Shown: positions 34,001 through 46,973, counted from the first letter of the stretch. The stretch: DNA of 64,000 bases from Mytilus trossulus (GCF_036588685.1 NC_086386.1:19406001-19470000), one strand, 5' to 3'. Numbers and translations are program-made. Notes: generated by a model not told the origin, from the sequence alone.

Positions 34001-37000
34001 CCAGAGATGCAGAATTGAAAGAAATGCATATCCCGAAATCACGAAATCGAAAAATATATTCCCGGATCCAGTAAGGATCAATCCCCAAATCCCGACCTTA
34101 AAAACACACGATCCCGACGCCCCGAAAAATGCTCGCCTACTTTTAATCTCTACCTTACTTTCATTTTTGCCAAATCACTATTTTCCCTTTCAACAATAAA
34201 TTTGTATGCCCCATTTATGGGCATTATGTTTTCAGGCTAGTTTGTTCGTCCGTCCGTTCGTCCGTCTGTCCGTCCGTCCGTCCATGTCTGTCCCGCTTCA
34301 GGTTAAAGTTTTTGGTCGAGGTAGTTTTAGATGAAGTTAAGCATGTTTTACTTATTTTAATATATATGCAAGTGGTATGACCCCTTAAGTAGTAAACATT
34401 TCAAAGAAAACAGTAGACAGAATCAGGGCCGACATTCTATACTAACATAAAAAGTCCCTGACAGAATACAGATAGTCTCTATATATTGAAGTAGTACAAA
34501 ATGTATAATCGTAGTTTACATGTAGATAAACTCGAAAAATAATTATCTTCTCTAAGGAGGTATAATAGTTGTGGTTCTTGCGATCTAAACACCGTGATAT
34601 GAAACGCGAAAAGTAATTGTTCTCTCTAAGGAGGTATAATAGTTGTGATTATTGCGATCTAAACACCATGATATGGAAAACGCTCTGAAAGGCTTATTTT
34701 TCTCTCTCCATTCTTATTATTCATCATACGATTCGTTGTACTTGTGTCAAATATTTTACTTATTTTAATATATATATATATATACAACTGGTATGACCCC
34801 TTAAATAGTAAACATTTCAAAGAAAACAATAGACAGAATACAGAGAGTCTCTATTTATTAAAGTATCATAATCGTAGTTTACATATAGATAAACGCGAAA
34901 AATAATTATTGTAAGGAGGTATAATAGTTGTGGTTCATGCGATCTAAGCCCCATACTATGGAGAATGCTCTGATTGGCTTATTTATTTCATAATTTAGTT
35001 ATCTATCATACGATTGGTTGTATTTGTGCATCTTTCAAACTGGAAATCTAATCTATGACTAAAAGTTAGTCCGAAGACGGATTCTTCATATCCGGACTCC
35101 TTTTTTGTCGTTTTTCTCCCAAAATAACTCAATCTGAATAATCATAAGAATGGATGACAAATGCGACTATGCATGTTACCTATAGGACACAGAGGCATGA
35201 TGACTGATTTATTGTGGAAGGAAGAGAAGCGACACCAAAAATGAGGTCTTCTCGTTTAATAGTATAGATGAGGAAGTCTGCATTGAAATTGTAGTCAACT
35301 TTCAACTTGTAGTTATTTTAATAATGTTTATGAGTTGTCTCCCATTTTGTCTTGTATTAATATTACAAACCCACTGTAGTATTCTATAGAAAGTTGATAG
35401 GCTTCATAGAGAGTATACCTTCAATGGCATTTATATTCAAGACATGTTTCAAAACTTTTGTTTCAATATGCATCTTGATCTTTTGTCTCTCTATATATGA
35501 TATTGTAACCCTTGCAAAGCGGTGTGAAGCAAAGTTTGCCAGATTTGGTGTTGCAGGTTCAAAATAAAATAAACAGAAATAGCTTTTGCATTACATGTAC
35601 TACTGTACGCAAGCAGGTTTAATTATGTTTTTAATAAGTTGAAGAGGAATGCATTTTATTTAGACAATTAAAATGATTATTGACTCTTTCAGCCTTTATT
35701 CTTGTTATTATGCTGGAAGTGTTTATTGACCTTTTAAGTTTAAGGAGATAATCTTGTGGTTTCTACTACATGTTGGTGTTGTTTTGAAATTGTAATAGGC
35801 CTTTCTAAATGGAGATAATCCTGTGATGTCAAATGCATCTTGTTATTGTTTTAACATTGTAATGGCCCTTTGTAAGTAGATAATCTTATATCTGTATTAT
35901 GATGATTTTATTAATACCAGGACTTCCTTCTTAATTTCAGGAGAGAAGTAGATGTAGATAGACTACGTCCAGATAAATCAGCTAAAGCTAGTAAGTCACA
36001 ATACTTTAGTAGTCAATTGGTGAAATAAGACATTGGAATATTATTTAGGAGTATTTAATTTTTTGTGATTTGACCATCGAAAGGTAAACTTAGATGTAAT
36101 CTATTATTTTTAATTGTCATCATAATTCTATGCAACTTTTGCCCTAAATTTAAAAAAAAATAAGTTGGATAAATAAAATGCATATTGCAATTTTCAGGAA
36201 TATATTATATTTCTGATTTTTATCAATTGAGATTTAATTATGTTATATGTAAACTATTATTTTATCATTGAAATTATATAAAATTAATTTCTAACAATTT
36301 TTTCCCCCAATTAAATTGCAGTTTGATAAAAAAAAATTGTACATTCTGATTTCAATCTGTAATGTTTTGTCCTTATGAATGATTATATTTCATTATTGTT
36401 ATTTTTTGTTTTGAAAGCTTGTCAATTATAACTTATCACTGTTTGTATTTTAACAATTTGAAAAACTTCTATTGTGATGACTTCCCTTGAAACTACAATA
36501 GCCAGTGTGCATTTGATTGATAAAATAAAGATGAAAAGCAAAACAATTTATTTTATCTCATTTTTTTTGTAGGATCTATTATTAAACATTGGCAAAAAAG
36601 GCGGGTAAGTGTACATTACTTAAATTTTCTTTTAACTTTTTAATTATCAAAATGAATATAAATGACTTTTAGGTTTTCTGGTATACACATGCATGCTTTT
36701 GATATTATAATTTTGAAACGTATCTATCAACATATTACCAAAATTGGATTTCAGAATTTCTATACTTTTGCTCTAATTTTGTATTAAAGAGCAGGACTGA
36801 TTGATTTATGTAAATATAGAGATAGAATTTTATACAAACTTAAATTTTTCATTTATTTCTATATCCCATGTTATAGTAAGCAGAAGTGAACATATTTGTA
36901 CTGTTGATTTTTCGTTTTCTATCTGTATGTAGGGGATCTCTTTGGGGGGTTCCCATCTCGGATCCTGTTTACTGTTTTGTCAGATTTCTATATCCATTTA

Positions 37001-40000
37001 CACTATGTTTGTTAGCAATTCTCATTTTTTTTTGTCAATTCCCAGGTCCCACTAGACCTCATTTCCCATTTTCAGGACACAATAATTTATAACTTTCACT
37101 TGTAATGCTTACATAAAATCGGCAATCCCACATCATGCTTGGACCCCAATAAGACCCACTATATACATTTTTGATGTCTGTGTGTATTGATGTAGCTCCT
37201 TTATATAAGCCTATATTTTATTTCATTGCATGCATGTTTTGATAGCCTTAGTTTTGTTGTTATGGATGGGTTTTATGTTTTATTGCAGATGAAAGCAATG
37301 ACTGTTGAACAGAACCTCCCCCCTCGCATGACTCAGCCTGCAGCTCTCCCTCCTCCTCTTCCTCTTTCTAATGTGGTACAGAATGACAGTAAGTAGGATT
37401 GTGGTGTAGCTACTTATAAAAAGGGGGTGTGGCTGTTAGTGGAAAGTTGGACGGCAGGTAATAAAAAGGGGGCATGGCAGTTTATTACAAGGGGTCAGGC
37501 TGTTGATGGGAAGGTGGGATAGTAGTTATTTCAAAGGGACATGGGAGTTTATTTGAATGGGTGTGTGTCTATTATTGGAAAGTTTGACAGCAGTTAATAA
37601 AAAGGGGGCATGGTAGTTTATTAAAAGGGGGCCAGGCTGTTGATGGGAATGTGGGATAGTAGTTATTTCAAAGGGACATGGGTGTGTGTCTATTATTGGA
37701 AAGTTTGACAGCAGTTAATAAAAAGGGAGTCAAGCTGTTGATCAGAAGGTGTGATAGTAGTTATTTCAAAGGAACATGGGAGTTTATTTGAATGGGTGGT
37801 GTGTCTATTATTGGAAAGTTTGACAGCAGTGAATCAAATTAGGCATGGCATTTTATAGAGAAAAGGGGTGGGGAATGTGAAACAGATAGACCATTAAATA
37901 AGAAGGGGCATAGCAGTTTATAGAAAGAAGGGTTTTTTATTTTTTGGAAAGGGAATATAGAAGTCACTAAAAAAGGGCATTGTTGTTAATAGAGATAGGA
38001 TGGTCTGTAATTGGAAGGCATAATATCAGTTAAATGAAATAAGCGGACTTTCTACAAGAATGAAGTAGTATGTGGTTAGTTGGACTGGTGAATTGGAATA
38101 TGGTAGTAAATGAAGTTCTTTGAAAGTGAGAAATAGCAGTATTATGACTAACATGAATATGTCAGAAAACTGTTGGATCAAAGCAATAAATTAGTTTGGG
38201 TAATATAGACAATTTGTTTGAGAATTTACTTTGGTTTCCAGAACAAAAGTTTTACAGCAAAACTAGGTTTAAGCTTTTGGTTGAATTCTATTCAAATTCT
38301 TTTGACAATTCTACTAGTATCTACAAGTTGGTGGTAAGAAAATATTGTGATTAAGTACTAGTTATACAGTAAACTACCTGTCAGTACATAACTTAAGAAA
38401 GGTATTAGGGTTTTAATTGTTTTTTGAAATGAGTCCCCATTTTGTAGTTTATCATACCTTACACGCTATAGTAAATGTTTCCTATGTTAATTTCTCATTT
38501 CGGTTATGGGTAATGTCCTTTAACAGTTGCATGTTGTTTCCTCTACTATTTGAAGATTCAGTGAAAATTAAGTAAACATTTCCCGTATAATATGACATGA
38601 TGCTTTTCAGAACCAGCAGTACCAGTATCTAATATGCCACCCCCACCACCAGTTACGATGGCTGTCCCAATGCAGCCCCCACCAGTCTTCCATCAACCTC
38701 CACTTATGGCATACGGTGGCCCTATGATGGACCAACCACCACATCCACATATGAATGTACCTGTGGCATGTCTTGGTATGGATGGCCAGCCACCACCGAT
38801 GCCACCTCATATGATGAATGGTGGTGCTATGGTTGCCTATAATGGTGAGAACGGCATGATGGGACAAGAAAGTATGACAAATCCAGTTGTTTATGTTCCA
38901 TTCATGGAAACAATTATGCCTACAGAAGTTAATGTGGATTATCCCCCTTCTGAAGATTCCAGGGGACTGGATCTCCCTCTTAATGGTAGGTATTTTATGA
39001 AGAGTGACAATACTAATAAATGATAATAGAACATTGCTGAATCTCTGTTTGGTTTAGAACAAACTAGGTACTATGGATTAATTTATTTTCATGGGTACCA
39101 ATTTTATATGAATTTGGTTAAATATACTTACCATGAAATTACATTTATATTATATAGAATATGTTTGCTTTCACAACATGTTCTCATCGCAATTAACTAG
39201 GTGATTAAAAATTACATCCATGAGATGTACTCACCTACGTCATAGTTCACCTGTGTAACATACACTAGCTTTAGTTTTAATTTTTGCGTTCAAGAGAACG
39301 CATGTTTCTCGTCGGCAAGGATTCTTAACAGTTTACTGTTGAAAATCCTTATGTTTTATAAAAGACATTATTTGTTTTCGGAATATCGGTATACGATTGA
39401 TTTAATGTGAATCAGAATACAGCACTTCTGCCAAGATTCTGCTATGCACGTTTTCGTCATTTTTACAGCTTACGAGTCTGGAAATACGACGACATAGAAA
39501 ATGACCTTTGTTTAGCCGCCATTTTCAAACATTAAATCGGGTCCGAGGAAAGGCAGAATTTATCTGTCAAAATCGGACATGTTACGTGAGTACTACGTTT
39601 TAAAAAAAAAAAAAAATATATTTTTAAACGGATGTTTATTTCTTTTTTCAAGCTCAGCTGACCGGATTTTTCACTGCATTAGAGCAATGCTACGAAACGG
39701 GTCGAGTGTAAAGTTTGGATAAAGTCGATTGTTTACAATTTGCAATCTGTACACGAGACTGTGTAAACACATCACTATATTAAAATCAGAATAGGTATTT
39801 TGACCAGATCTGATTGTTTTTCATGTGGAAAACGTCCGTATGGGAGCGTATACCACTTTTGTCACTTGTTTACAATTTGCAGTCTGTTACGTGTACACCT
39901 GGTACACGAGACTGTGTAAACACATAACTATTGAATCAGAAGAGGTATTTTGACCAGATCTGATTATTTTAATGTGGATAACGTCCGTATGGGAGCGTAT

Positions 40001-43000
40001 ACCACTATTGTGACTAGAACCTTAATTGGTTCAATAAATTTCAATCAGAAAAGGGAATCTGCCCATTTCTGATTGTTTTATTTGGAAAACGTTTCATACA
40101 GAGAGCGTAGACCAACAGTGGTAATGTTTTAACAGTTGATAAATACATCACAATCAGAATAGGGATTTTGCCCACAACTGATGATGTTTATTTGGTTAAC
40201 CTTCCATTCAGGGAACATAAACCATATTTATTGAAAATAAAACGTGCTCAATGGATCACTATAGAATTGAAATAGAATAGGGATTTTGCCCAAGTCTATT
40301 TGATTAATGTTGACATGTTTCATACAGGAAACATAGGAACTAGAACAACATGCATGATTTAGAATCTGTAAGTTGATTTCATTCTAATAAAATACAGATT
40401 TGATATCTTACATAAAATTAAATCATAACTATTTATTAATTGCACATTGATATTTATTGAGCATAGAATTGCACGTGGATGATTGTTGCAAATAAAATAA
40501 ATTAGAATCAGACTAGTGAATTTAAGTACAAGTCTATCTGATTTTTCTAGACATCCTTCCACCCAGGGAAAATTATGTCTACTTTTTATTATATTTTAAA
40601 ACAACACAAGCATAGCTAATATATGGTTGCACATTGTTTTTGTGATGAACCAACAGTTAAGTCAATTGACATATTTGCTCATATTGATAATATATTGAAC
40701 AAGTGTCGGGAAATAGTCAAGACAGATATTAAAGACACTAAAATAATACATTGTTATCTAGTACAATACAAATGTGATTGCAGTTTAAGCATACCAATAC
40801 ATACTTCTTTTAAATATGTCCAGTTTAAATCAGGACAGTAATATTTTTCCAGAACAGCAAATTGCTGTAAATATTTAATTATTTTTTACTGATAAATAAT
40901 TCTCCAATGCTCTAACAGACATGGAGACAGTAAGAATGGAGCACTGTTCTAAATACAGTTGATAGCTTGTGACAACTCTTTTTACTAATATTAAATTTCA
41001 TGGTCAGTTTACTTATGACAAGAACAACATGAATATTATAAGTATGAACTGCTATAACCAATTGTTTGTTTTTGTCGGCAGTAAGGAAACAAAGGCTTTT
41101 ATATTTTTTTATGTAAACATTAGATTGTCTATTGAATAAAGAGTTTAGGGGATGCCATGATGCATTTCACAAAGACTCATTCAAGGTAATGGCTTATATA
41201 TTGATTACATAATTCAGAGTGTACATTGCCAATGCATATAATATAATATGTACTAATTCTGTTTTGTTTTGAGTACACAAAAAAGAGGTGATAACATAAG
41301 ACTTAAGAGAATATCTTATCCTCACTATATGGGAATCACTGTCAAATTATACATATATGTATCTTCCAATCATGAAAGCAAAAGGAGTTTGGATGCTCTT
41401 TTAAAGATAGAAAATTATGCCTAATAATTTACATCTTAAGTTTTTTTAAGCAATGCCAACAGATGGGCAAGTTTCTGCTATAAGGATTCATTCATTGGGT
41501 CTGTTTTATTCTTAATGTGAGATTGGTAGAACCCAACAGTTTATGCAATGGCTACACATTGTTTTTCCTAGAGTTAAATATTGATTCAGAATTCTGAAGT
41601 ATAGAGGACTCAAATATGCTGATTTATAGAAACAAGATTATCATTAATAAATTAGATCTTGTAAAAAAAAAAAAAAAATAAAAAAAAAAAAAAATAAGTA
41701 AAATATTGGTAAATAAATAAATAAGATTTAAGCATTGTGGATGCCGGATTTATTTAAAATACTAGACATGATCTAGGAAATAGAAGTAGTTCTCAAGATT
41801 TGAAACTATCTATTATACAGCTCTTTATATAAATTTTTTATTTAGTCAGTCTTTACGTCAGATGCAGAAAAAAAAAAGAAAAAAAAGAAGAGGTTATTTT
41901 TGGAGTAACACATGATGTACCAATATAAACATATAATATATATACTTTTCAATTGGTTCTCAAATTTTAGCACCATTGTAGAAGCAGTTAATCTAACAGC
42001 AAAATGTAGGAAAAGCAATTTATTCAAAAGACTGATTAATAGTTAGCAAATAGCTTTCAATTGTCTAAGAATAGTACATGGAAGTAAAATATAGTATGAT
42101 AATTCCATGATTATATCAAATCAAATACGAGACATTTTCTTAATATTATACCTAAATATTAAAATGTCACTGTTTATTTTTGCTCATTATATGCATAAAG
42201 TTAAAAAAATCTAGTCTGGTCAAAGTCAAATTGTGTATAATCTACATGCTGGAAGGTTTTCCGAATGCATGTGATTTTAATTTCGGAATTGATGGTAATT
42301 ATTCATTTTTCAATTTCCATATTACCAGCCAGAATAATATAAATATAAAGCATAGAGTTAGTATCTAATGCAAGAATATGCTACACAAAATTAAAATGTG
42401 TTTATTTTAAACAATTACTTTGAATTTTGATTCAATATTGTTTTGAAAGATGTGATTATTTAAATCACATTAATTTTGTTTTTTCCAAATCTGGGGACAA
42501 ATGCAAAATTCTTCTGAGTGACTAAGTTAACCAAATGGCTGGGTTGAAGTCACAAAATACTACAAAAAGTTGTTTGGTTTATATATATTGAATCATATCA
42601 GAATGTATAGGATTCAGATGAGGTGAACCAAGACAGAAATAAAATGAGCATTTTTGATAGTGAAACCATTTCTGAAATAACTAAGAACACTTAGGATACT
42701 GCAAGTTAGTACAAGTGTTTTCCATTTTGTCAAACAAGTGTTTTTCTTTAAATACAACTATAGAACTATATTTGACAAGTTGCATTTAAGTATTTCTGAT
42801 AGCGAAATAATTTCTGAAATTAATATAAACAATTGTCAAGAGCAACATACAAGAGTTGTTCATTACATGTATGTCAAATTTTTGTTTCTTTAAATTTGGA
42901 ACTGTGTACATGGCAAGATATTCTAGAAAGTTAACCGCTGTGAAATGTTAATTAGAAATATCAAAACATTTTATTTTAGACAGATTTTTCATAGCTGGAG

Positions 43001-46000
43001 AAAATCATCTGTTAGCATTCTTTTTGGATTTATAAGGACAACAATCATGGCTTTAATTCAGCTCAACATCCAAATGTTCTGTGGAAGCAGTATATCAATG
43101 GAAACATGTATACTGAAACTTTTCCACTGATTTGTCCATTTCTGTATTTTTACACTTGAGTAGTCCAATACAAAACAAAAATATTGTTCATGGTTGAAAT
43201 GGTAGACATTGTATTCAAAGGTTCTACCACTCATAGAAATTTTATCAGATTTTTAAAATTTAGTCAGTTTAGAGAATTGTCATTATACAATAGTACAAGA
43301 CTTCTCTTGAAGAAAATATTTTATTCTTAATCTATAAAATATTAAAAGTAGTATATCTAGCAGAGAAGCAAATTCTCAGGGACTATAACTTTAAAAAAGT
43401 TTAAAGATTAATCCAGATTTAGCATAATCATGAAACAACTTTGATTTGAGTCTTTAATAAACTTTGATTGTATTAAGGACACCTATTTACAAAGTATATT
43501 TTTTAATTGATTATAATTCTTTAATTAAGTAGAAAAGAATTTATTTCGAAAGATATGATATTGAACAGGTTATCAAAAGACGACAGCAATCATATATTAT
43601 CTGTTATTATATTAATATAGACAGAGACATATAAATTGAATTATATGTCTTTGATATAGAGAAAACAATGGAAAGTTAAAGAAAGGTAATAATGTTTCCA
43701 AATAAACTTAAGTTTCAAAGTTGAAAGTAAATGAAATTAAGGTTAGATTAGTTCTTGTCGATTTGTACAAGCAACAAGAACAACCTATTCAGAAACAAAT
43801 GCTTATTTACTGTTGCATAAATATTACAACACATTTAGCTCATAATGAAGGAGCTTTAATATAATTATTTCTATACTGACCTGCAGATTATTTATTCATC
43901 AGATATAGAAAGATGGGGTATATATATATACATGTGAGTGCCATTGAGACAACTCTACATCAAGTCTATTAATTTTGCATACTTGTATTTATACAATCTG
44001 CAAAGTTTGCCATTGATACATATAGTTATGCTTGATACATATAGTTATGCTTGATACATATAGTTATGCTTGATACATATAGTTATGCTTGATACATATA
44101 GTTATGCAGCATAGCTTCATTGTATAATAAATTCAGTAATTTCGGTTTTTACTAATATCCGTATTTACAAAAATTAAATGGAGTTACATTTTAAAAAATT
44201 TCACATTATTTTTTCTATGTTGAAATTGTATGTGTGTGAGAGAATTTATCCTCCACCAAATGAAATACTGCTTGTTAATCAGTAAATATTCTATATAATA
44301 TAAATGTAATTTCATGGTAAGTATATTTAACCAAATTCATATAAAATGGTAATTTTTGAAATCTCAAGAAGAGATTTTATATGAATTTATAGGGTTAAAT
44401 ATACTTACCACAATCCACCACCACCCCTGGAATAAATTCAGTTTTTTGTTCACTTAATTGAAATTATTCAATTAAAAGACAAATTAAAACTAAAGCTAGT
44501 GTATGTTACACAGGTGAACTATGACGTAGGTGAGTACATCTCATGGATGTAATTTTTAATCACCTAGTTAATTGCGATGAGAACATGTTGTGAAAGCAAA
44601 CATATTCTATATAATATAAATGTAATTTCATGGTAAGTATATTTAACCCTATAAATTCATATAAAATCTCTTCTTGAGATTTCAAAAATTACCATTTTCA
44701 TCGAATAACACTTGCAAGTTCATGGAATTTCATTTTTATGGTTATGTTGATTGCATTAAAGCCTTTAGAAATTTTGTCCTTTGTTGAACATTTAATTTCA
44801 TTGTTCACCTATGCCATGAAATCAACCAAAAATTGGTTCTGTCCGTGACTTTATCATATTCAACACTTTTTAACTGCTTATAAAGAAAGATTACAGTATA
44901 AAACTTGCCTCTATTGTCACTTCCTAACAAATGAACACTTTAAATAAGTAATTTATAGAATTCTGTTTTCTTTTTCAGATATCAACACACTAAGATTCTT
45001 CTTTAACCTTGGTGTCAGTGTAAGTATTCATTTTTCTCACAAACGTAAGAAATTCTATTGGCAAATATATTGTAGTAGCTTTACATGATAGAAATGTGGT
45101 GTGATGGCATAAGCCTTTTATTCATAGGATCATACCCGATTGATTATGTGTCTAATAACAAAGATTAATAATAGCAATGGTTTATGAATATGTGCAAGCC
45201 ATGAGATATTTACACATTTCACAATGGGTAGATGGTAAAGTTAAACTAAAAGTGAAACTTATCTGATTGTGATTGTTTCAATGGAATAAATTACAAACTT
45301 TTCTGACAATGAAAAACATTTTGGGACAATTCAGTTGTAGCTGACTTAGTACTTAAATAGAGAGCAAGTTTAGAATTTGAAAACATGTGAATTGTTGCAG
45401 TGGCAATCATGCCACATCTTGCGACTTTTATACCTAGGCTACTCTGAATGTTAAAAAAAACACTAGTACAATTATTTAGTAGTACACAGTAGTATACATT
45501 GTTTTCATACAGTTGAAATGAGAACTTAAACAAAATGCAGAGTATTTTTGCTCTAAATTGTTAAATTATTGACTTCTAAATATATCTATACAGTGGCGGA
45601 TGCAGGAATTTTCGAAAGGGGGGGTGCAGGGGGGGGGGGTGCAAAATTATCCCGATTCAAATGCATTGATCGGCCAAAATAAAGGGGGGGTGCGGACCCC
45701 CGGAACCCCCCCTCTGGATCCGCCACTGCTATATATATGACATGTGTAAGGGAATATAAATGTGAAACAACCAACCAACCAAAACCAGTTCAACAATGAA
45801 CTGTTGTCTATATAATGCCATGCTCAAACTATAAAAGTTTTGTTTGTTATAGCTATTACTAGAAAAATAAACACTTCTTTTTATTGGATGATTTAAGATT
45901 TCAATAATCAAATGAGTATACTGAATGTGCATGAAATATTTGCCACTGGACATTAAGTAACAACAATCAATCAATCTTAGAAAATATTTCGATCAATTGT

Positions 46001-46973
46001 GATGGATTAATTACAGAGTTGAAAGGTCAAATGCAATGTATAATCAAATGAGAAGTATTAATTATAGAAGTGTTTTTCATTTCAGCATTACAGAACTGTT
46101 AGTCTTCTGAGTCACTCCATGGCTGCTAGTCACAATGGAATCACACAGGGTCAGTCTCCGATAGTTTTATGTCAGTCTGCCCCGGTAACAAAATATAAAA
46201 CTAGTCCTAGTAATGGAGTTGATTATGCTCCCGTCTTTTCAACTTTCATACAACCAACGACACATAGTCCTGACAATGGTAATGAAAATGATGATAGAAG
46301 TAGTAACATATCGAATGATAGCGGGTGTGAGGCAAACAAGAATGATAGTGAACAAGATAATGTCAAAAACAACGAGGGTAGCATGAGTGAGAGAAATGGT
46401 AATAGTTCAGATATGTCAATATCTGATTCTGTCAACACTCCTCCTCCGGAGATAGATACATCGTCAGATCATGGTTATAAGACTGTTAAACGTAGAAAAT
46501 ATTTTATGTATAAAAATCTGAAACTTATCAAGCCTATCAAAGAAATACCAAACAAATATCTTGATTTGTTGAAATATTTAAGTCTTGAAAAATCAAGGTG
46601 TGAAGGTGAACCAATCATTTTGGCACCCCAGAATATACCTCAACCTGTTAATGTTGGGAACATGGCACACAATCAGATGCCTCTGTCACAGTGTAATTCA
46701 TGTAATGTCAACTTGAACCCCACGGCACAAAGTTTTGTTCCAGGGAAAGTTCCAAGTGGCATGGTAATATCAAATTTACCAAATAGTTGTAGTAGTCAAG
46801 GCAACAATAGTACAATTAACAGTAAGAATAGCATGCCACCACCCTCTTCTCCTTCTGTGCACAATGCATGTTCTAGTCATACTCGCCTGCCTAATATGCC
46901 TAAACCATATGTATCGCCACATAACATTAGCTTTTCACATTTTCATACCATTCCCTTTCCAGCAGGTCAATGA
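3946..46973 (+). CDS. OTUD4: Spliced gene for OTUD4/ALG13/ovarian-tumor-like protein (OTU + Tudor + Pro-rich + FFFNLG motif). Exons: 3946-4092, 4904-4990, 5691-5737, 6657-6729, 7473-7554, 17016-17148, (21152-21251 or 19023-19080), 25129-25243, 27585-27631, 33281-33378, 35941-35990, 36573-36604, 37289-37388, 38611-38985, 44979-45019, 46086-46973
   Basis: Manually spliced; all GT-AG junctions are phase-compatible, giving 804 aa (790 aa with the alternative exon 7). Family motifs: MDSYL..VGLWRKPIARDGFCLFRATSEQ, PVPFRIAKALDPLIYRNTELDIW, PGDRC..HGHIQEV..FIEELGER, GLDLPLNDINTLRFFFNLGV. Symbol is a family-level call (OTUD4/ALG13 co-orthologue). Confidence 0.88.
4904..4990 (+). CDS. OTU gene exon 2 (VYMTQAHYEKLYNLSKEFFYRLEGIDQDY)
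   Basis: ttttcag| acceptor, |gtaagt donor, phase 0-0; V..TQ..H follows SEQ as in OTUD4/ALG13. Confidence 0.88.
5691..5737 (+). CDS. OTU gene exon 3 (VWTESDAMFSLSVICR)
   Basis: ttattacag| and AG|gtaatt; aligns with the family W.....I.ALS..Y segment. Confidence 0.85.
6101..6358 (+). mobile_element. Short HINE/DINE-like element
   Basis: TTTTTATGC.CC start, (GTCC/GTTT)-like microsatellite, GGGGCAT subterminal repeat, 3' hairpin, CTTGTT end; relatives at 25781-26074, 34201-34340 and near 51333. Confidence 0.75.
6657..6729 (+). CDS. OTU gene exon 4 (HNFLVYEVPGCPPYLAIDNCFSEN)
   Basis: tttcag| and |gtaagt; matches the family F..Y..PG.PP....DN segment. Confidence 0.9.
6933..7205. mobile_element. 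TTAA-flanked MITE (Kolobok/piggyBac-like)
   Basis: TTAA|GGTGGTACC...GGTACCACC|TTAA; second copy at 49426-49689, inverted remnant near 5120-5270. Confidence 0.85.
7473..7554 (+). CDS. OTU gene exon 5 (VMLCRIDATHLESVFPKSYVKELALCQ), His box
   Basis: Long polypyrimidine tract + cag|, T|gtaagt; aligns with LC....HYD.VY.......A.CQ. Confidence 0.9.
10198..12300 (-). mobile_element. Truncated CMC/EnSpm-like DNA transposon relic
   Basis: CCCTC terminus interrupting the host repeat, dense CTGAA/TTCAG subterminal repeats 10215-10800, transposase-like exons; other terminus not found. Confidence 0.55.
11166..12266 (-). pseudogene. Spliced C-terminal fragment of an EnSpm-like transposase (exons 11865-12266 and 11166-11280)
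   Basis: RNSYTVSY...YGEVLFF and terminal FPNFYEKD*; phase-2 GT-AG junction; in-frame TAG near 12194. Confidence 0.6.
12716..13698. mobile_element. PIF/Harbinger-like non-autonomous element
   Basis: ~33-bp TIR GGCCA.G.TTTTTTAATTTGTTGGTTTACGGAT; TAA at 12713-12715 and 13699-13701; CpG-rich, suggesting it is young. Confidence 0.88.
13742..15636 (+). mobile_element. HINE/DINE-like element with internal tandem arrays (~160-bp unit x~4, ~130-bp unit x~4)
   Basis: TTTTTATACGACCGC start, GTCGTATA inverted copy, (GTC)n; repeats at 13824-14430 and 14437-14960. Confidence 0.8.
17016..17148 (+). CDS. OTU gene exon 6 (SIVYDILYHGVYNFGEEEIKEAIQIIREQEGKQRKKSCRYSGTS)
   Basis: ttacag| phase 1, TG|gtaatg phase 2; matches the family LYEILY..VF..DEEE...AI segment. 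Confidence 0.9.
17218..17430 (+). mobile_element. Dispersed repeat fragment (GGAGCAGGATCTGCTTACCCTTCCGGAGCACCTG family); class uncertain
   Basis: Interrupts the HINE microsatellite; recognised from memory as an abundant mollusc repeat. Confidence 0.55.
17808..18032. mobile_element. MITE with internal TGATTA repeats
   Basis: TIR GAGG.CCCTCATGGGG; TTAAGT duplicated on both flanks. Confidence 0.82.
19023..19080 (+). CDS. Candidate alternative exon 7a (LQHLGSVEKINSKPVTKKK)
   Basis: Phase 2 to 0 fits exons 6 and 8; branch-like cttaac just upstream, but weak AAG acceptor and gtatat donor. Confidence 0.35.
21012..21094 (+). CDS. Candidate alternative first coding exon (MSHARWLLQQTCFLFMDQSFNDGDLLM) for an OTU-less isoform
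   Basis: In-frame TAA just upstream, ATGs at 21012 and 21057, strong |gtaagt donor, 57-nt intron in phase with exon 21152; locally CpG-rich. Confidence 0.45.
21152..21251 (+). CDS. OTU gene exon 7b (SSPDSSDSSCGSTGEQSPEKACVLYNRHSSHSS)
   Basis: ttttcgttgtag| and TCG|gtaagg; phase 2 to 0; GC-rich coding-like composition. Confidence 0.72.
22882..23421. mobile_element. TTAA-flanked MITE (Kolobok-like)
   Basis: TTAA|AGTCATATGAAAC...GTTTCGTATGACT|TTAA; CpG-rich interior explains the overlapping short ORFs. Confidence 0.8.
25129..25243 (+). CDS. OTU gene exon 8 (EDTGIFIIKPPVPFRIAKALDPLIYRNTELDIWEEDKR)
   Basis: Hallmark KALDP.IYRN.E.D.W motif of OTUD4/ALG13/Otu; canonical splice sites. Confidence 0.93.
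25781..26074 (+). mobile_element. Short HINE/DINE-like element
   Basis: Same family as 6101-6358. Confidence 0.72.
27585..27631 (+). CDS. OTU gene exon 9 (EARHKAIVYCPGDRCM), start of Tudor domain
   Basis: tttcag| and |gtaagt; Y..GD(K/R)C motif. Confidence 0.9.
31619..32429. mobile_element. Non-autonomous TIR element nested in an older repeat
   Basis: TIR CAGAGATGCAA/TTGCATCTCTG; flanks CGAAAT and TGAAAT look like a 6-bp TSD with CpG decay. Confidence 0.78.
33281..33378 (+). CDS. OTU gene exon 10 (IVSEEGKQLYHGHIQEVFDNKAVVAFIEELGER), Tudor core
   Basis: HIQEV..FIEEL motif; tttgtag| and AG|gtaggc. Confidence 0.92.
33523..35268 (-). mobile_element. Canonical non-autonomous Helitron, 1746 bp
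   Basis: Minus strand reads A|TCTATACTATTAA ... ACCCGCGATTTCGCGGGT hairpin (33532-33549) ... CTAG|T; no TSD. Confidence 0.9.
35941..35990 (+). CDS. OTU gene exon 11 (REVDVDRLRPDKSAKA), end of Tudor domain
   Basis: tttcag| phase 2, A|gtaagt; V....LRP Tudor terminus. Confidence 0.9.
36573..36604 (+). CDS. OTU gene exon 12 (RSIIKHWQKRR)
   Basis: ttttttttgtag| and CGG|gtaagt; phase 1 to 0 bridges its neighbours. Confidence 0.82.
37289..37388 (+). CDS. OTU gene exon 13 (MKAMTVEQNLPPRMTQPAALPPPLPLSNVVQND)
   Basis: ttgcag| and A|gtaagt; LPPR motif. Confidence 0.85.
37409..37980 (+). repeat. Degenerate G-rich tandem repeat (~100-140-bp higher-order unit)
   Basis: Recurring GATAGTAGTTATTTCAAAGG and GTGTCTATTATTGGAAAGTTTGACAGCAG blocks. 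Confidence 0.8.
38611..38985 (+). CDS. OTU gene exon 14, Pro/Met-rich low-complexity region ending SEDSRGLDLPLN
   Basis: Overlaps ORF 38634-39023; ttttcag| and G|gtaggt. Confidence 0.9.
39729..40351 (+). repeat. Array of five diverged hairpin modules inside the DIRS-like element
   Basis: Hairpin AATCAGA..GG(T/G)ATTTTG(A/C)CC..TCTGATT at about 39784, 39934, 40042, 40151 and 40270, each followed by a second hairpin. Confidence 0.8.
44013..44107. repeat. Perfect 19-bp minisatellite x5 (TTGATACATATAGTTATGC)
   Basis: Direct reading. Confidence 0.95.
44979..45019 (+). CDS. OTU gene exon 15 (DINTLRFFFNLGVS)
   Basis: LRFFFNLG motif of OTUD4/ALG13; canonical splice sites. Confidence 0.93.
45591..45728. 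mobile_element. Small MITE CAGTGGCGGAT...ATCCGCCACTG
   Basis: TIRs; CTATA on both flanks; degenerate relatives near 8800-9022 and 27670-27810. Confidence 0.85.
46086..46973 (+). CDS. OTU gene terminal coding exon (N/S-rich, basic cluster, PAM2-like motif)
   Basis: tttcag| phase 0 reads HYRTVSLLSHS into ORF 46119-46973. Confidence 0.9.
   Translation, partial: HYRTVSLLSHSMAASHNGITQGQSPIVLCQSAPVTKYKTSPSNGVDYAPVFSTFIQPTTHSPDNGNENDDRSSNISNDSGCEANKNDSEQDNVKNNEGSMSERNGNSSDMSISDSVNTPPPEIDTSSDHGYKTVKRRKYFMYKNLKLIKPIKEIPNKYLDLLKYLSLEKSRCEGEPIILAPQNIPQPVNVGNMAHNQMPLSQCNSCNVNLNPTAQSFVPGKVPSGMVISNLPNSCSSQGNNSTINSKNSMPPPSSPSVHNACSSHTRLPNMPKPYVSPHNISFSHFHTIPFPAGQ

What the first reader, a model, noticed from the sequence alone, without database searches (positions are those of the whole stretch)
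39729..40351. Five-unit array of covarying hairpins near the 5' end of the DIRS-like element
Hairpin A recurs with its pairing kept while the sequence changes: AATCAGA..GGT-ATTTTG-ACC..TCTGATT (39784-39815, 39934-39965), CAATCAGAAA..GGG-AATCTG-CCC..TTTCTGATTG (40042-40075), ATCAG..GGG-ATTTTG-CCC..CTGAT (~40153-40182), AAATAGA..GGG-ATTTTG-CCC..TCTATTT (40270-40301). GGT/ACC to GGG/CCC and AATCAGA/TCTGATT to AATAGA/TCTATT are compensatory. Hairpin B follows each (GTGG..ACGTCC/GGAGCGT..CCAC; TGGTT..TTCC/GGAA..AACCA; ATGTTTC/GAAACAT). Units 1-2 are preceded by a longer stem (GTTTACA/TGTAAAC; in unit 2 also CAGTCT/AGACTG and CGTGTAC/GTACACG). Covariation between diverged paralogous units implies selection on structure. 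Inference: a multivalent packaging or helper-protein recruitment signal, or a small-RNA precursor cluster. The loop contains ATTTT, the same pentamer as the recombination core, which may be coincidence.
Basis: partly seen in the sequence, partly recalled or inferred. Interest (0 to 1): 0.8.

Follow-up and report, generated by a model that had tools for sequence, protein, structure and literature searches.

The report
Hairpin repeat array in ORF-less DIRS element
A mussel jumping-gene family that encodes no protein carries six diverged tandem repeats that each still fold into two small hairpins; the pattern is real, but the protein-coding partner that must move this family lacks the repeats, so they are probably not its packaging signal.

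Summary
The array is real. It has six units, not five: alpha1, alpha2, beta, gamma, delta, then epsilon after a 150-nt spacer. Each unit has hairpin A and hairpin B.

**Host element.** The array lies 620-1490 nt inside a 5.6-kb ORF-less DIRS1-type element (39101-44698). That element has about 50-57 copies in a Mytilus genome.

**Support for structure**
- Pairing among the diverged units exceeds shuffled and slid controls.
- Compensatory changes are confirmed.
- Stem positions differ about half as often as other positions between old lineages.

**Arguments against an RNA-specific reading**
- Both strands fold equally well, and the stems are almost purely Watson-Crick.
- Changes between subfamilies and lineages show no clear excess of compensation.
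- Old copies lose hairpin A.
- Two of the strongest stems (pre-alpha2, beta) are recent, lineage-specific gains; the pre-alpha2 gain looks like an inverted copy of neighbouring sequence.

**Partner.** I found the autonomous partner. It has identical termini and ICR junction and an intact tyrosine recombinase. It has no hairpin-A motif and does not share the sequence just inside the ITR.

**Verdict**
- A helper-shared packaging signal is disfavoured.
- Small-RNA precursors are unlikely by size and could not be tested.
- Best reading: a family-specific palindromic repeat module, possibly acting in cis in single-stranded intermediates. Function is unproven.
- Interest is moderate to low.

The parts
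39101..44698 (+). Host element: ORF-less DIRS1-type retrotransposon copy (non-autonomous)
   Evidence: 29 genomic copies all begin at 39101. No ORF of 100 aa or more lies inside it, and there are no tblastn remnants of DIRS proteins. The pieces below give the DIRS1 design.
39101..39287 (+). Left inverted terminal repeat
   Evidence: It is the reverse complement of 44481-44667 at 97-98% in sister copies. The sequence was read.
39724..39781 (+). Pre-stem of unit alpha1 (GTTTACA...TGTAAAC)
   Evidence: MFE -10.1 kcal/mol; direct repeats D5 and D8 match alpha2.
39782..39858 (+). Unit alpha1: hairpin A 39784-39815, hairpin B 39825-39856
   Evidence: Model R1 scores 84 bits; folds.
39867..39922 (+). 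Pre-stem of unit alpha2 (7+7+7 bp, includes CGTGTAC/GTACACG)
   Evidence: -22.7 kcal/mol as RNA, z = -4.6; -15.7 kcal/mol as minus-strand DNA, z = -4.1. The insertion that makes the inner stem is absent from alpha1, L043-L046 and L047.
39932..40007 (+). Unit alpha2: hairpin A 39934-39965, hairpin B 39974-40005
   Evidence: Model R1 scores 84 bits; folds.
40017..40032 (+). Small hairpin before unit beta (GAACC...GGTTC)
   Evidence: -7.0 kcal/mol, z about -3.5; kept in L045 and L046.
40041..40117 (+). Unit beta: hairpin A 40042-40075 (10+3 bp, the strongest), hairpin B 40082-40115
   Evidence: Model R1 scores 81 bits. Hairpin A is -16.9 kcal/mol, z = -6.6. The old lineages have mismatches at pairs 40050-40067 and 40053-40064.
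40150..40227 (+). Unit gamma: hairpin A 40153-40182, hairpin B 40193-40224
   Evidence: Model R1 scores 85 bits; folds.
40268..40345 (+). Unit delta: hairpin A 40270-40301, hairpin B 40309-40340
   Evidence: Model R1 scores 76 bits; folds.
40350..40413 (+). Spacer hairpin between delta and epsilon
   Evidence: Inverted repeat I6: 21-nt arms, 76% complementary. The 40301-40400 bin is 73-87% identical in the four old copies.
40504..40584 (+).
   Evidence: Model R1 scores 62 bits; folds. Present in all lineages.
44286..44410 (+). Internal complementary region: reverse complement of the left end, then reverse complement of the right end
   Evidence: 44286-44347 is the reverse complement of 39101-39162. 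44348-44410 is the reverse complement of the right end, as read. Strongest fold signal in the element, z = -6.6. 57 such junctions in the genome.
44481..44698 (+). Right inverted terminal repeat (to 44667) with its right extension (to 44698)

Best explanation
The array is a family-specific module of the non-coding body of a non-autonomous DIRS1-like retrotransposon.

**What is shown**
- Ancestrally there were five head-to-tail units of about 110 nt: alpha, beta, gamma, delta, a spacer, then epsilon. Alpha was duplicated in this family.
- Each unit is built of two short palindromes, so either single strand can fold into hairpins A and B.
- The array is as old as the family.
- Hairpin potential, and especially the sequence of hairpin A's 5' arm and loop (AATCAGAAWAGGKAWTYTGMCC), has been kept while the rest of the units drifted.
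- The partner that supplies the recombinase does not carry the module.

**What is inferred**
- The module arose by unit duplication plus inverted, template-switch-like copying.
- The active lineage retains it because it helps this parasitic element in cis while it is single-stranded. The form concerned could be the genomic RNA or the single-stranded cDNA that DIRS elements use. The benefit could be stabilising or organising the intermediate, or binding a factor other than the helper's own recognition signal.
- It is not the packaging signal shared with the helper, and not a small-RNA gene cluster.
For: **An integral, old part of the family**
- All full copies have it.
- Independent old lineages L043-45 and L046, at 73-81% identity, have alpha-beta-gamma-delta-spacer-epsilon.

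**Pairing kept among units only 63-76% alike**
- 90% of cells paired against 82% in shuffles; 5 doubly changed pairs.
- The same trend holds on 47 distinct units.
- The two halves of hairpin B are only 0.48 identical between unit types, yet each unit folds with z between -1.3 and -3.7.

**Uneven conservation inside the unit**
- Hairpin A's 5' arm and loop: 0.83 pairwise identity. Linker: 0.60. Hairpin B halves: 0.48.

**Stems change less between lineages**
- Against L043-45: 9.6% of paired sites differ against 18.1% of unpaired sites (p = 0.002).
- Against L046: 10.5% against 17.3% (p = 0.015).
- 122 of 159 pairs are pairable in all three lineages, with balanced turnover: 7 pairable only in F1, 5 only in both others.

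**Other**
- Fold signal: z = -3 to -5 at 39840-40040.
- Low-level transcripts cover the array. In one paired RNA run they lie mostly with the first mate on the - strand, which means sense RNA if the library is of the usual stranded type.
- DIRS-1 amplifies through single-stranded cDNA (PMC7192593, read).

**Partner lacks the module**
- The partner shares the left-end 32-mer and the ICR junction and has an intact recombinase ORF.
- It shows no strict or loose hairpin-A motif.
- It does not share the 32-mer at 39300-39331.
Against: - No strand asymmetry, and almost no G-U pairs on either strand.
- In the young family, shared substitutions are as frequent in stems as outside them.
- The excess of pair-keeping changes there is marginal: 5-6 of 9, against 17 of 70 for neutral private mutations.
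- Between lineages, changed pairs are mostly broken and only one is doubly changed.
- My own rough calculation from the counts: the stem versus non-stem rate ratio between lineages (odds ratio about 0.48) is not clearly different from the ratio among neutral private mutations (about 0.80). The difference gives z about -1.65.
- Other internal blocks of the element are as conserved as the array.
- Units gamma to epsilon fold only weakly in 120-nt windows, z = -0.6 to -1.7.
- As DNA, most of the hairpins are only -3 to -5 kcal/mol.
- The strongest stems are recent gains in one lineage.
- No experiment or small-RNA data are available.
- The partner's 5' region could be checked only by motif and word searches, not read.
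Confidence: 0.4

Rival explanations
1. The array is a by-product with no function. A tandem repeat of palindromic units is created and kept palindromic by mutational processes: unit duplication, and template switching during replication or reverse transcription that copies one arm from the other. It is carried along as stuffer in a non-coding element.
For: - The inner stem of the alpha2 pre-stem comes from an insertion that is the reverse complement of the adjacent GTACACG. Alpha1 and all old lineages lack it.
- Beta's 10-bp stem and several other pairs are gains specific to the young lineage.
- The stems are strand-symmetric, nearly pure Watson-Crick palindromes.
- No purifying signal within the young family.
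- Old copies lose hairpin A.
- The autonomous partner lacks the array.
- Template switching is documented to create and repair hairpins without selection (PMC8794818, found).
- Satellite-like arrays inside non-autonomous elements are common in bivalves (PMC7492417, found).
Against: - Conservation inside the unit is uneven: hairpin A's 5' arm and loop are at 0.83 against 0.48-0.60 elsewhere. Neither template switching nor whole-unit homogenisation explains this.
- Stems differ about half as often as non-stems between lineages.
- Five diverged units all keep two hairpins.
- Several separate template switches within 900 nt would need a high local rate.
Confidence: 0.27
2. The array acts on double-stranded DNA. 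It is a row of binding sites for a host or element protein, working as a promoter, enhancer or insulator-like module downstream of the left ITR. The palindromes are dimer-binding sites, not hairpins.
For: - A 22-nt motif (AATCAGAAWAGGKAWTYTGMCC), including the 'loop', is the best conserved part of every unit.
- The arms are symmetric and strand-neutral.
- The units repeat at about 110-nt spacing.
- The array lies in the 5' transcribed region. From my own knowledge, other retroelements carry binding-site arrays there: the Su(Hw) sites of gypsy and the promoter monomers of mouse L1.
Against: - Both-side changes that keep complementarity (GGT/ACC to GGG/CCC, TC/GA to AT/AT, G-C to T-A) are not expected if one protein reads all units.
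- Hairpin B keeps its fold with only 48% sequence identity.
- No binding-site library could be searched here.
- The arms do not resemble the element's own recombination junction.
Confidence: 0.18
3. One reading: a multivalent packaging or helper-protein recruitment signal in the RNA, recognised by the proteins of the autonomous DIRS element.
For: - The array lies 620-1490 nt from the 5' end, after the ITR.
- Hairpins with a conserved loop are repeated.
- The non-autonomous family far outnumbers the partner: about 50 copies against 3-4.
Against: - The autonomous copies share the 32-nt left end and the ICR junction.
- The strict hairpin-A motif has 174 genomic hits against 11 for the control, but none in C1:8355324-8360450 or C6:30171361-30176533.
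- The loose invariant-only motif has no hit in the C1 copy.
- The 32-mer at 39300-39331 is absent from all four partner copies, although even the 20-27% diverged lineages keep it.
- The partner spans only 5140 nt from its left end to the ICR and ends in a recombinase ORF. If it carries the usual DIRS genes, there is little room for a 900-nt non-coding array. This last step is inference; only its last 1.4 kb was read.
Confidence: 0.1
4. A cluster of small-RNA precursors (miRNA-like or other hairpin-derived small RNAs).
For: - Hairpins sit in a transcribed repeat.
- The alpha2 pre-stem is a 56-nt hairpin with about 21 pairs.
Against: - Hairpins A and B are 30-36 nt with stems of 5-14 bp, too short for known Dicer or Drosha substrates (my own knowledge).
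- The one long hairpin is recent and lineage-specific.
- No Rfam match at E <= 1.
- No small-RNA run was on offer.
Confidence: 0.05

Closest known systems
TOC1 of Chlamydomonas, an active non-autonomous DIRS retrotransposon
   Same: An ORF-less element of the DIRS order that must be moved in trans. It is named as such in bioRxiv 10.1101/2022.06.16.496473 (read).
   Different: The sequences were not compared here. Whether TOC1 has a hairpin repeat array was not checked. The present element is in a bivalve and has the ITR plus ICR design of DIRS1 proper.
LARD-type non-autonomous retrotransposons (large non-coding internal domain with conserved predicted RNA structure; my own knowledge, not checked in the library)
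   Same: A large non-coding body between functional termini, parts of which are conserved and predicted to fold. It outnumbers its autonomous partner.
   Different: LARDs are LTR elements moved by integrase-type partners. Here the termini are DIRS1-type, and the structured part is a tandem array of short palindromes.
Retroviral and retrotransposon packaging (psi) signals (my own knowledge)
   Same: Several stem-loops in the 5' transcribed region downstream of the terminal repeat.
   Different: A psi signal is shared by helper and passenger. Here the helper lacks the motif.
Satellite-like tandem arrays carried inside non-autonomous mobile elements of bivalves (Helentron-borne arrays, PMC7492417, found)
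   Same: A short internal tandem array dispersed through a bivalve genome by a non-autonomous element.
   Different: Those are rolling-circle elements with fairly homogeneous monomers. Here the carrier is a DIRS-type retroelement, the units are only 63-76% alike (TRF finds nothing), and each unit is two palindromes.
Hairpins created and maintained by template switching (PMC8794818, found)
   Same: One-step creation of perfect stems by copying the opposite arm. The alpha2 pre-stem insertion looks like this.
   Different: That work concerns replication of cellular genes. Here the switch could equally have happened during reverse transcription. No ancestral reconstruction was made.
Arrays of protein-binding sites in the 5' region of retroelements (gypsy Su(Hw) sites, mouse L1 monomers; my own knowledge)
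   Same: A repeated module just inside the 5' terminal repeat, with a conserved core motif per unit.
   Different: Those arrays are not palindromic hairpins and show no complementary double changes.

Membership tests
DIRS1-like retrotransposon (host element, non-autonomous derivative) | Inverted terminal repeats | tested here: met
   39101-39287 is the reverse complement of 44481-44667.
DIRS1-like retrotransposon (host element, non-autonomous derivative) | Internal complementary region made of the complements of both termini | tested here: met
   44286-44347 is the reverse complement of the left end. 44348-44410 is the reverse complement of the right end including its extension.
DIRS1-like retrotransposon (host element, non-autonomous derivative) | Encodes reverse transcriptase and tyrosine recombinase | tested here: not met
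   No ORF of 100 aa or more and no tblastn remnant, hence non-autonomous. A partner with the same termini has a recombinase ORF (PF00589, E = 2e-5, below Pfam's cut-off) with 31% identity to clear DIRS recombinases. The partner's reverse transcriptase was not read.
Packaging / helper-recruitment signal | Present in both helper and passenger RNAs | tested here: not met
   No strict or loose hairpin-A motif in the partner copies that the hit listings reach, and the 32-mer just inside the ITR is not shared. This rests on motif and word searches only.
Packaging / helper-recruitment signal | Bound by the helper's Gag-like protein and needed for mobilisation | not testable with these tools
   Needs binding and retrotransposition assays.
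Structured RNA under selection | Covariation beyond phylogenetic expectation | tested here: inconclusive
   Above shuffled and slid controls among paralogous units. No excess of compensation between lineages or subfamilies.
Structured RNA under selection | Strand-specific signal (G-U pairs on the RNA strand) | tested here: not met
   6 G-U of 172 pairs on the + strand against 9 of 179 on the - strand, with equal energies.
Small-RNA precursor hairpins | Hairpin long enough for processing (stem of about 20 bp or more) and a known family match | tested here: not met
   Stems of hairpins A and B are 5-14 bp. Rfam finds nothing at E <= 1. Only the recent alpha2 pre-stem reaches about 21 pairs.
Small-RNA precursor hairpins | Discrete small RNAs mapping to the stems | not testable with these tools
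   No small-RNA run was offered, and the single read-laying run was used on long RNA-seq.
Tyrosine-recombinase core site (two inverted arms round a short spacer) | Arms resemble those at the element's own recombination junction | tested here: not met
   The geometry is similar (13-nt arms, 6-nt spacer), but local alignment of all six units, both strands, to the circle junction gives p >= 0.1 against shuffles.
Element-borne satellite-like tandem repeat | Head-to-tail units, also found as longer free arrays | tested here: inconclusive
   The units are head-to-tail. All of the best 150 model hits lie in arrays of six units or fewer within element copies. The hit lists are capped, so free arrays cannot be excluded.
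tRNA-derived module | Cloverleaf detectable | tested here: not met
   ARAGORN finds nothing in 39000-44800.

The most novel reading that the evidence does not exclude
The array is an invention of the parasite's own: a multivalent structured module, absent from the helper, that raises the success of a non-autonomous DIRS element. It could do this by protecting or organising its single-stranded RNA or cDNA intermediate, or by recruiting a host factor through the conserved hairpin-A loop and 5' arm. That would explain why the ORF-less family outnumbers its helper more than tenfold.
Probability: 0.2. Interest if true: 0.6.

Novelty: new member of a known kind. Interest (0 to 1): 0.33.

Why it matters
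How DIRS elements replicate is poorly understood. From the DIRS-1 study read (PMC7192593), the primer for reverse transcription is still unknown. From my own knowledge, no packaging signal has been defined either.

Non-autonomous DIRS elements are hardly described. A phrase search found a single mention, TOC1. The DIRS1 overview paper mentions no non-autonomous copies, tandem repeats or hairpins.

This genome offers a clean helper/passenger pair with identical termini. Such a pair shows which sequences a DIRS passenger must share with its helper: here only the terminal repeats and the ICR. It also shows which sequences it may invent. If the hairpin array does raise mobilisation, it would be a handle on the single-stranded stage of the DIRS cycle.

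If it does not, it is a tidy example of short palindromes that are made and kept by mutation alone and look like covarying RNA. That is a caution for structure scans of repeats.

Tried and rejected
- **Tandem Repeats Finder** on 38000-42000 found no array; the units are too diverged.
- **Rfam** at E <= 1 on 36000-44000 found nothing. **ARAGORN** found nothing.
- **Coding remnants.** tblastn of DIRS proteins from this genome against eight copies of the element found nothing.
- **First search for the partner.**
  - The 12 best Phage_integrase loci are true DIRS1-like elements with the order RNase H, Dam-like methyltransferase, recombinase.
  - They share no DNA with this element and give no model hit.
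- **Left ITRs without an array.**
  - The five on C1 at 69.40-69.78 Mb are a truncated copy that breaks at 39827 and was then duplicated. They are not a partner.
  - The distant ITRs of L023 and L028 are explained by unrelated nested insertions.
- **Old copies L043, L044, L045.** They looked like a sister family, but they share flanks. They are one old insertion that was later duplicated, so they count as one dead lineage.
- **Column-wise covariation for hairpin B** failed because the stems sit in shifted registers.
- **Loop ATTTTG versus the recombination core:** no similarity beyond chance.
- **Reading the partner's 5' region.**
  - I stopped there and used motif and word searches that return only coordinates.
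- **Counting method.** Majority states of copies were used inside scripts only to count differences in the non-coding array.

Full report
**What is there**

The stretch 39724-40586 holds six related units, not five.
- The repeat finder finds five copies of a 51-nt core, spaced 150, 109, 109 and 118 nt.
- A covariance model built from the units (R1) scores these five at 76-85 bits and a sixth, epsilon, at 40504-40584 with 62 bits. Nothing else in the 64-kb window exceeds 18 bits.
- Each unit folds on its own into hairpin A and hairpin B.
  - Hairpin A has a 5-10 bp outer stem, an internal loop, a 3-bp inner stem and a 6-nt loop (8 nt in epsilon).
  - Hairpin B is a two-tier stem with a 5-6 nt loop (8 nt in the window's beta).
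- The two alpha units also carry a longer pre-stem, at -10.1 and -22.7 kcal/mol.

**Is it more than chance**
- On the six units, 90% of pair cells are standard pairs against 82% in shuffles (0 of 500 reach the observed value).
- Five of 14 pairs show a change on both sides (3 of 500), and the covariation score is 0.29 against 0.125 (0 of 500).
- Sliding the partners by 1-3 columns drops pairing to 31-60%.
- On 47 distinct units from ten sources the picture is the same: 84% against 79%, and 7 doubly changed pairs. Relatedness inflates such numbers.
- The whole array folds better than dinucleotide shuffles on both strands: z = -4.6 on + and -6.7 on -.
- In a sliding scan, the signal sits mostly in the alpha2 pre-stem and beta (z = -3 to -5). 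Gamma to epsilon reach only -0.6 to -1.7.

**The element and the genome**
- The array is 620-1490 nt inside a dispersed repeat whose copies all begin at 39101.
- The element has 187-nt inverted terminal repeats. Its internal complementary region is the complement of the left end followed by the complement of the right end with its extension. This is the DIRS1 design described in PMC3266345.
- It has no ORF of 100 aa or more and no remnant of DIRS proteins.
- The genome holds 57 ICR junctions with at most 3 mismatches and 174 strict hairpin-A motifs against 11 for the reversed control. That means about 50 array-bearing copies.
- Young copies fall into groups about 97-98% and about 95-96% identical to the window over the array region 39600-40700. 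Over the longer aligned stretches they are about 96-97% and 92-93%.
- The genome is a Mytilus. Contig C3 has exactly the length (94,312,406) of the contig that carries an NCBI M. trossulus protein.
- Public runs under four organism labels hold 43-62% of the element's 31-mers.

**Older lineages**
- L043, L044 and L045 (73-80% identical to the window copy) share their flanks. They are one old insertion that was later duplicated.
- L046 is an independent old copy (75-81%), and L047 is a fragment.
- All have the order alpha, beta, gamma, delta, spacer, epsilon, with a single alpha.
- The array therefore predates these splits. The alpha duplication and the pre-stem are specific to the window's lineage.

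**Tests for selection**

*Within 32 young copies*
- Private mutations hit paired and unpaired sites alike: 0.145 against 0.175 per site.
- Subfamily-shared variants do the same: 9/344 against 19/519.
- Of the nine shared variants at paired sites, five switch between Watson-Crick and G-U, one creates a pair and three break one.
- Among neutral private mutations, 17 of 70 keep pairing. The excess among shared variants is marginal.

*Between the young family and the old lineages*
- Paired sites differ about half as often as unpaired ones: 9.6% against 18.1% (p = 0.002) for L043-45, and 10.5% against 17.3% (p = 0.015) for L046.
- However, three quarters of the changed pairs are simply broken, and only one is doubly changed.
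- A symmetric count finds 122 of 159 pairs pairable in all three lineages: 7 only in the young family and 5 only in both old ones. This is turnover, not steady improvement.
- In the old copies, hairpin A of alpha, beta, delta and epsilon has lost its fold signal (z from +0.5 to -1.2), except alpha in L046. Hairpin B mostly keeps it. Dead copies would do this under any reading.

*Among unit types*
- The 5' arm and loop of hairpin A are the best kept (0.83 pairwise identity).
- The linker is at 0.60, and the two halves of hairpin B are at only 0.48, yet every hairpin B still folds.
- This uneven conservation is the best argument that something reads the units.

**Which strand, RNA or DNA**
- The stems are nearly pure Watson-Crick palindromes: 6 G-U in 172 pairs on the + strand and 9 in 179 on the - strand, with total energies of -161.2 and -161.9 kcal/mol.
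- As minus-strand DNA, only the alpha2 pre-stem (-15.7) and beta (-11.3) are clearly stable.
- Three raw RNA-seq runs of a related organism label give thin coverage of the element. In one run, depth was 1-13, with 3-5 over most of the array.
  - Reads there lie mostly with the first mate on the - strand, which means sense RNA if the library is of the usual stranded type.
  - The reads carry fixed differences from the window copy, which suggests that a few other copies supply them. Read-through from host genes cannot be excluded.
- No small-RNA run was on offer.

**Origin of some stems**
- The inner stem of the alpha2 pre-stem is made by an insertion that is the reverse complement of the neighbouring GTACACG. 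Alpha1 and every old lineage lack it.
- In beta, two pairs (40050-40067 and 40053-40064) are mismatched in both old lineages. Its near-perfect 10+3-bp hairpin is therefore probably a gain of the young lineage.
- Such one-step gains are what template switching produces (PMC8794818, found).

**The helper**
- Listing all ICR junctions and fetching the 1.4 kb upstream of those not yet seen revealed three copies: C12:34353253-34358424, C6:30171361-30176533 and C13:37803735-37808906.
  - Their similarity to the window starts only at 44243 (89% identical).
  - An open reading frame of at least 318 aa precedes it.
- That frame matches Phage_integrase (E = 2e-5), is 100% identical in the three copies, and is 31% identical to the recombinases of other DIRS1-like elements here. 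A fourth copy on C1 is 98% identical and has a stop.
- These copies carry the same 32-nt left end, 5140 nt upstream of the ICR.
- They have no strict hairpin-A motif; the sorted listing covers the C1 and C6 copies.
- The loose motif made of the invariant positions alone has no hit in the C1 copy.
- The 32-mer at 39300-39331 has 51 genomic hits, including the old lineages, but none in any partner copy.
- The passenger therefore shares only the terminal repeats and the ICR region with its helper. The array belongs to the passenger alone. This speaks against a helper-shared packaging signal.
- I could not read the partner's 5' region.

**Reading**
- Shown: a family-specific, old tandem module of palindromic units whose hairpin potential and hairpin-A motif have been kept.
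- Inferred, with confidence about 0.4: the active lineage keeps it because it helps the passenger in cis while single-stranded. DIRS-1 is reported to amplify through single-stranded cDNA (PMC7192593).
- Rivals:
  - a functionless palindromic repeat made and repaired by template switching (0.27);
  - a row of protein-binding sites on double-stranded DNA (0.18);
  - small-RNA precursors (0.05).
- The likeness of the loop to the recombination core is chance.

**Known relatives**
- The host element is a bivalve counterpart of non-autonomous DIRS elements such as TOC1.
- Element-borne tandem arrays are common in bivalves (PMC7492417).
- A hairpin array of this kind in a DIRS passenger did not turn up in the library searches I made. 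I file it as a new member of a known kind.

Noticed in passing
G000:C12:34353253-34358424, C6:30171361-30176533, C13:37803735-37808906, C1:8355324-8360450 (loci L056, L058, L059, L067 hold the last 1.4 kb): Autonomous DIRS1-like partner of the window's ORF-less element. It has the same 32-nt left end and the same 31-nt ICR junction. Its recombinase ORF is 100% identical over 318 aa in three copies, so it was probably active recently. The C1 copy is 98% identical and has a stop.
   Followed up: partly
window 39200-39330 (inner edge of the left ITR): Two sister copies have unrelated nested insertions at 39300 (L023) and 39305 (L028), and a third (L024) has a deletion of 39203-39324. The spot also has a strong fold signal (z = -4.2 at 39280). 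It may be an insertion or breakage hotspot.
   Followed up: partly
G000:C1:69.40-69.78 Mb (L054 is one of them): Five left-ITR-bearing copies lie on the same strand within 380 kb. The one I read (L054) breaks at 39827, inside unit alpha1, so this looks like a truncated copy that was then segmentally duplicated.
   Followed up: partly
G000:C13:25.05-25.50 Mb (L043, L044, L045): One old insertion of the family was duplicated three times together with several kb of flank. The copies are 88-95% alike.
   Followed up: yes
window 44012-44108: A 19-nt tandem repeat (TTGATACATATAGTTATGC, about 5 copies) is expanded in the window copy. Sister copies and a public contig skip 57-74 nt here.
   Followed up: partly
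window 40350-40413: A further hairpin (21-nt arms, 76% complementary) lies in the spacer between units delta and epsilon, within one of the better-conserved 100-nt bins of the array (73-87% in the old lineages).
   Followed up: no
window 39404-39441: A possible worn-out seventh unit upstream of the array (AATCAGAATA ... TTCTG, matching repeat D10). It scores below the model's threshold.
   Followed up: no
L031-L041 (for example G000:C7:48489708-48493232): At least three other DIRS1-like families with RNase H, a Dam-like methyltransferase and a tyrosine recombinase in that order. Their ORFs are intact and many copies are near-identical. Their termini are unrelated to this element.
   Followed up: partly
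window 38634-39023 and 46119-46973: Proline-rich and serine/asparagine-rich open frames flank the element on the + strand and look like exons of a host gene. The element may sit in an intron, which would complicate reading sense RNA-seq coverage as element-driven.
   Followed up: no
window 41663-41724 and 41868-41891: Long A-runs (up to 32 A) lie inside the element. Alignments of some sister copies break here.
   Followed up: no
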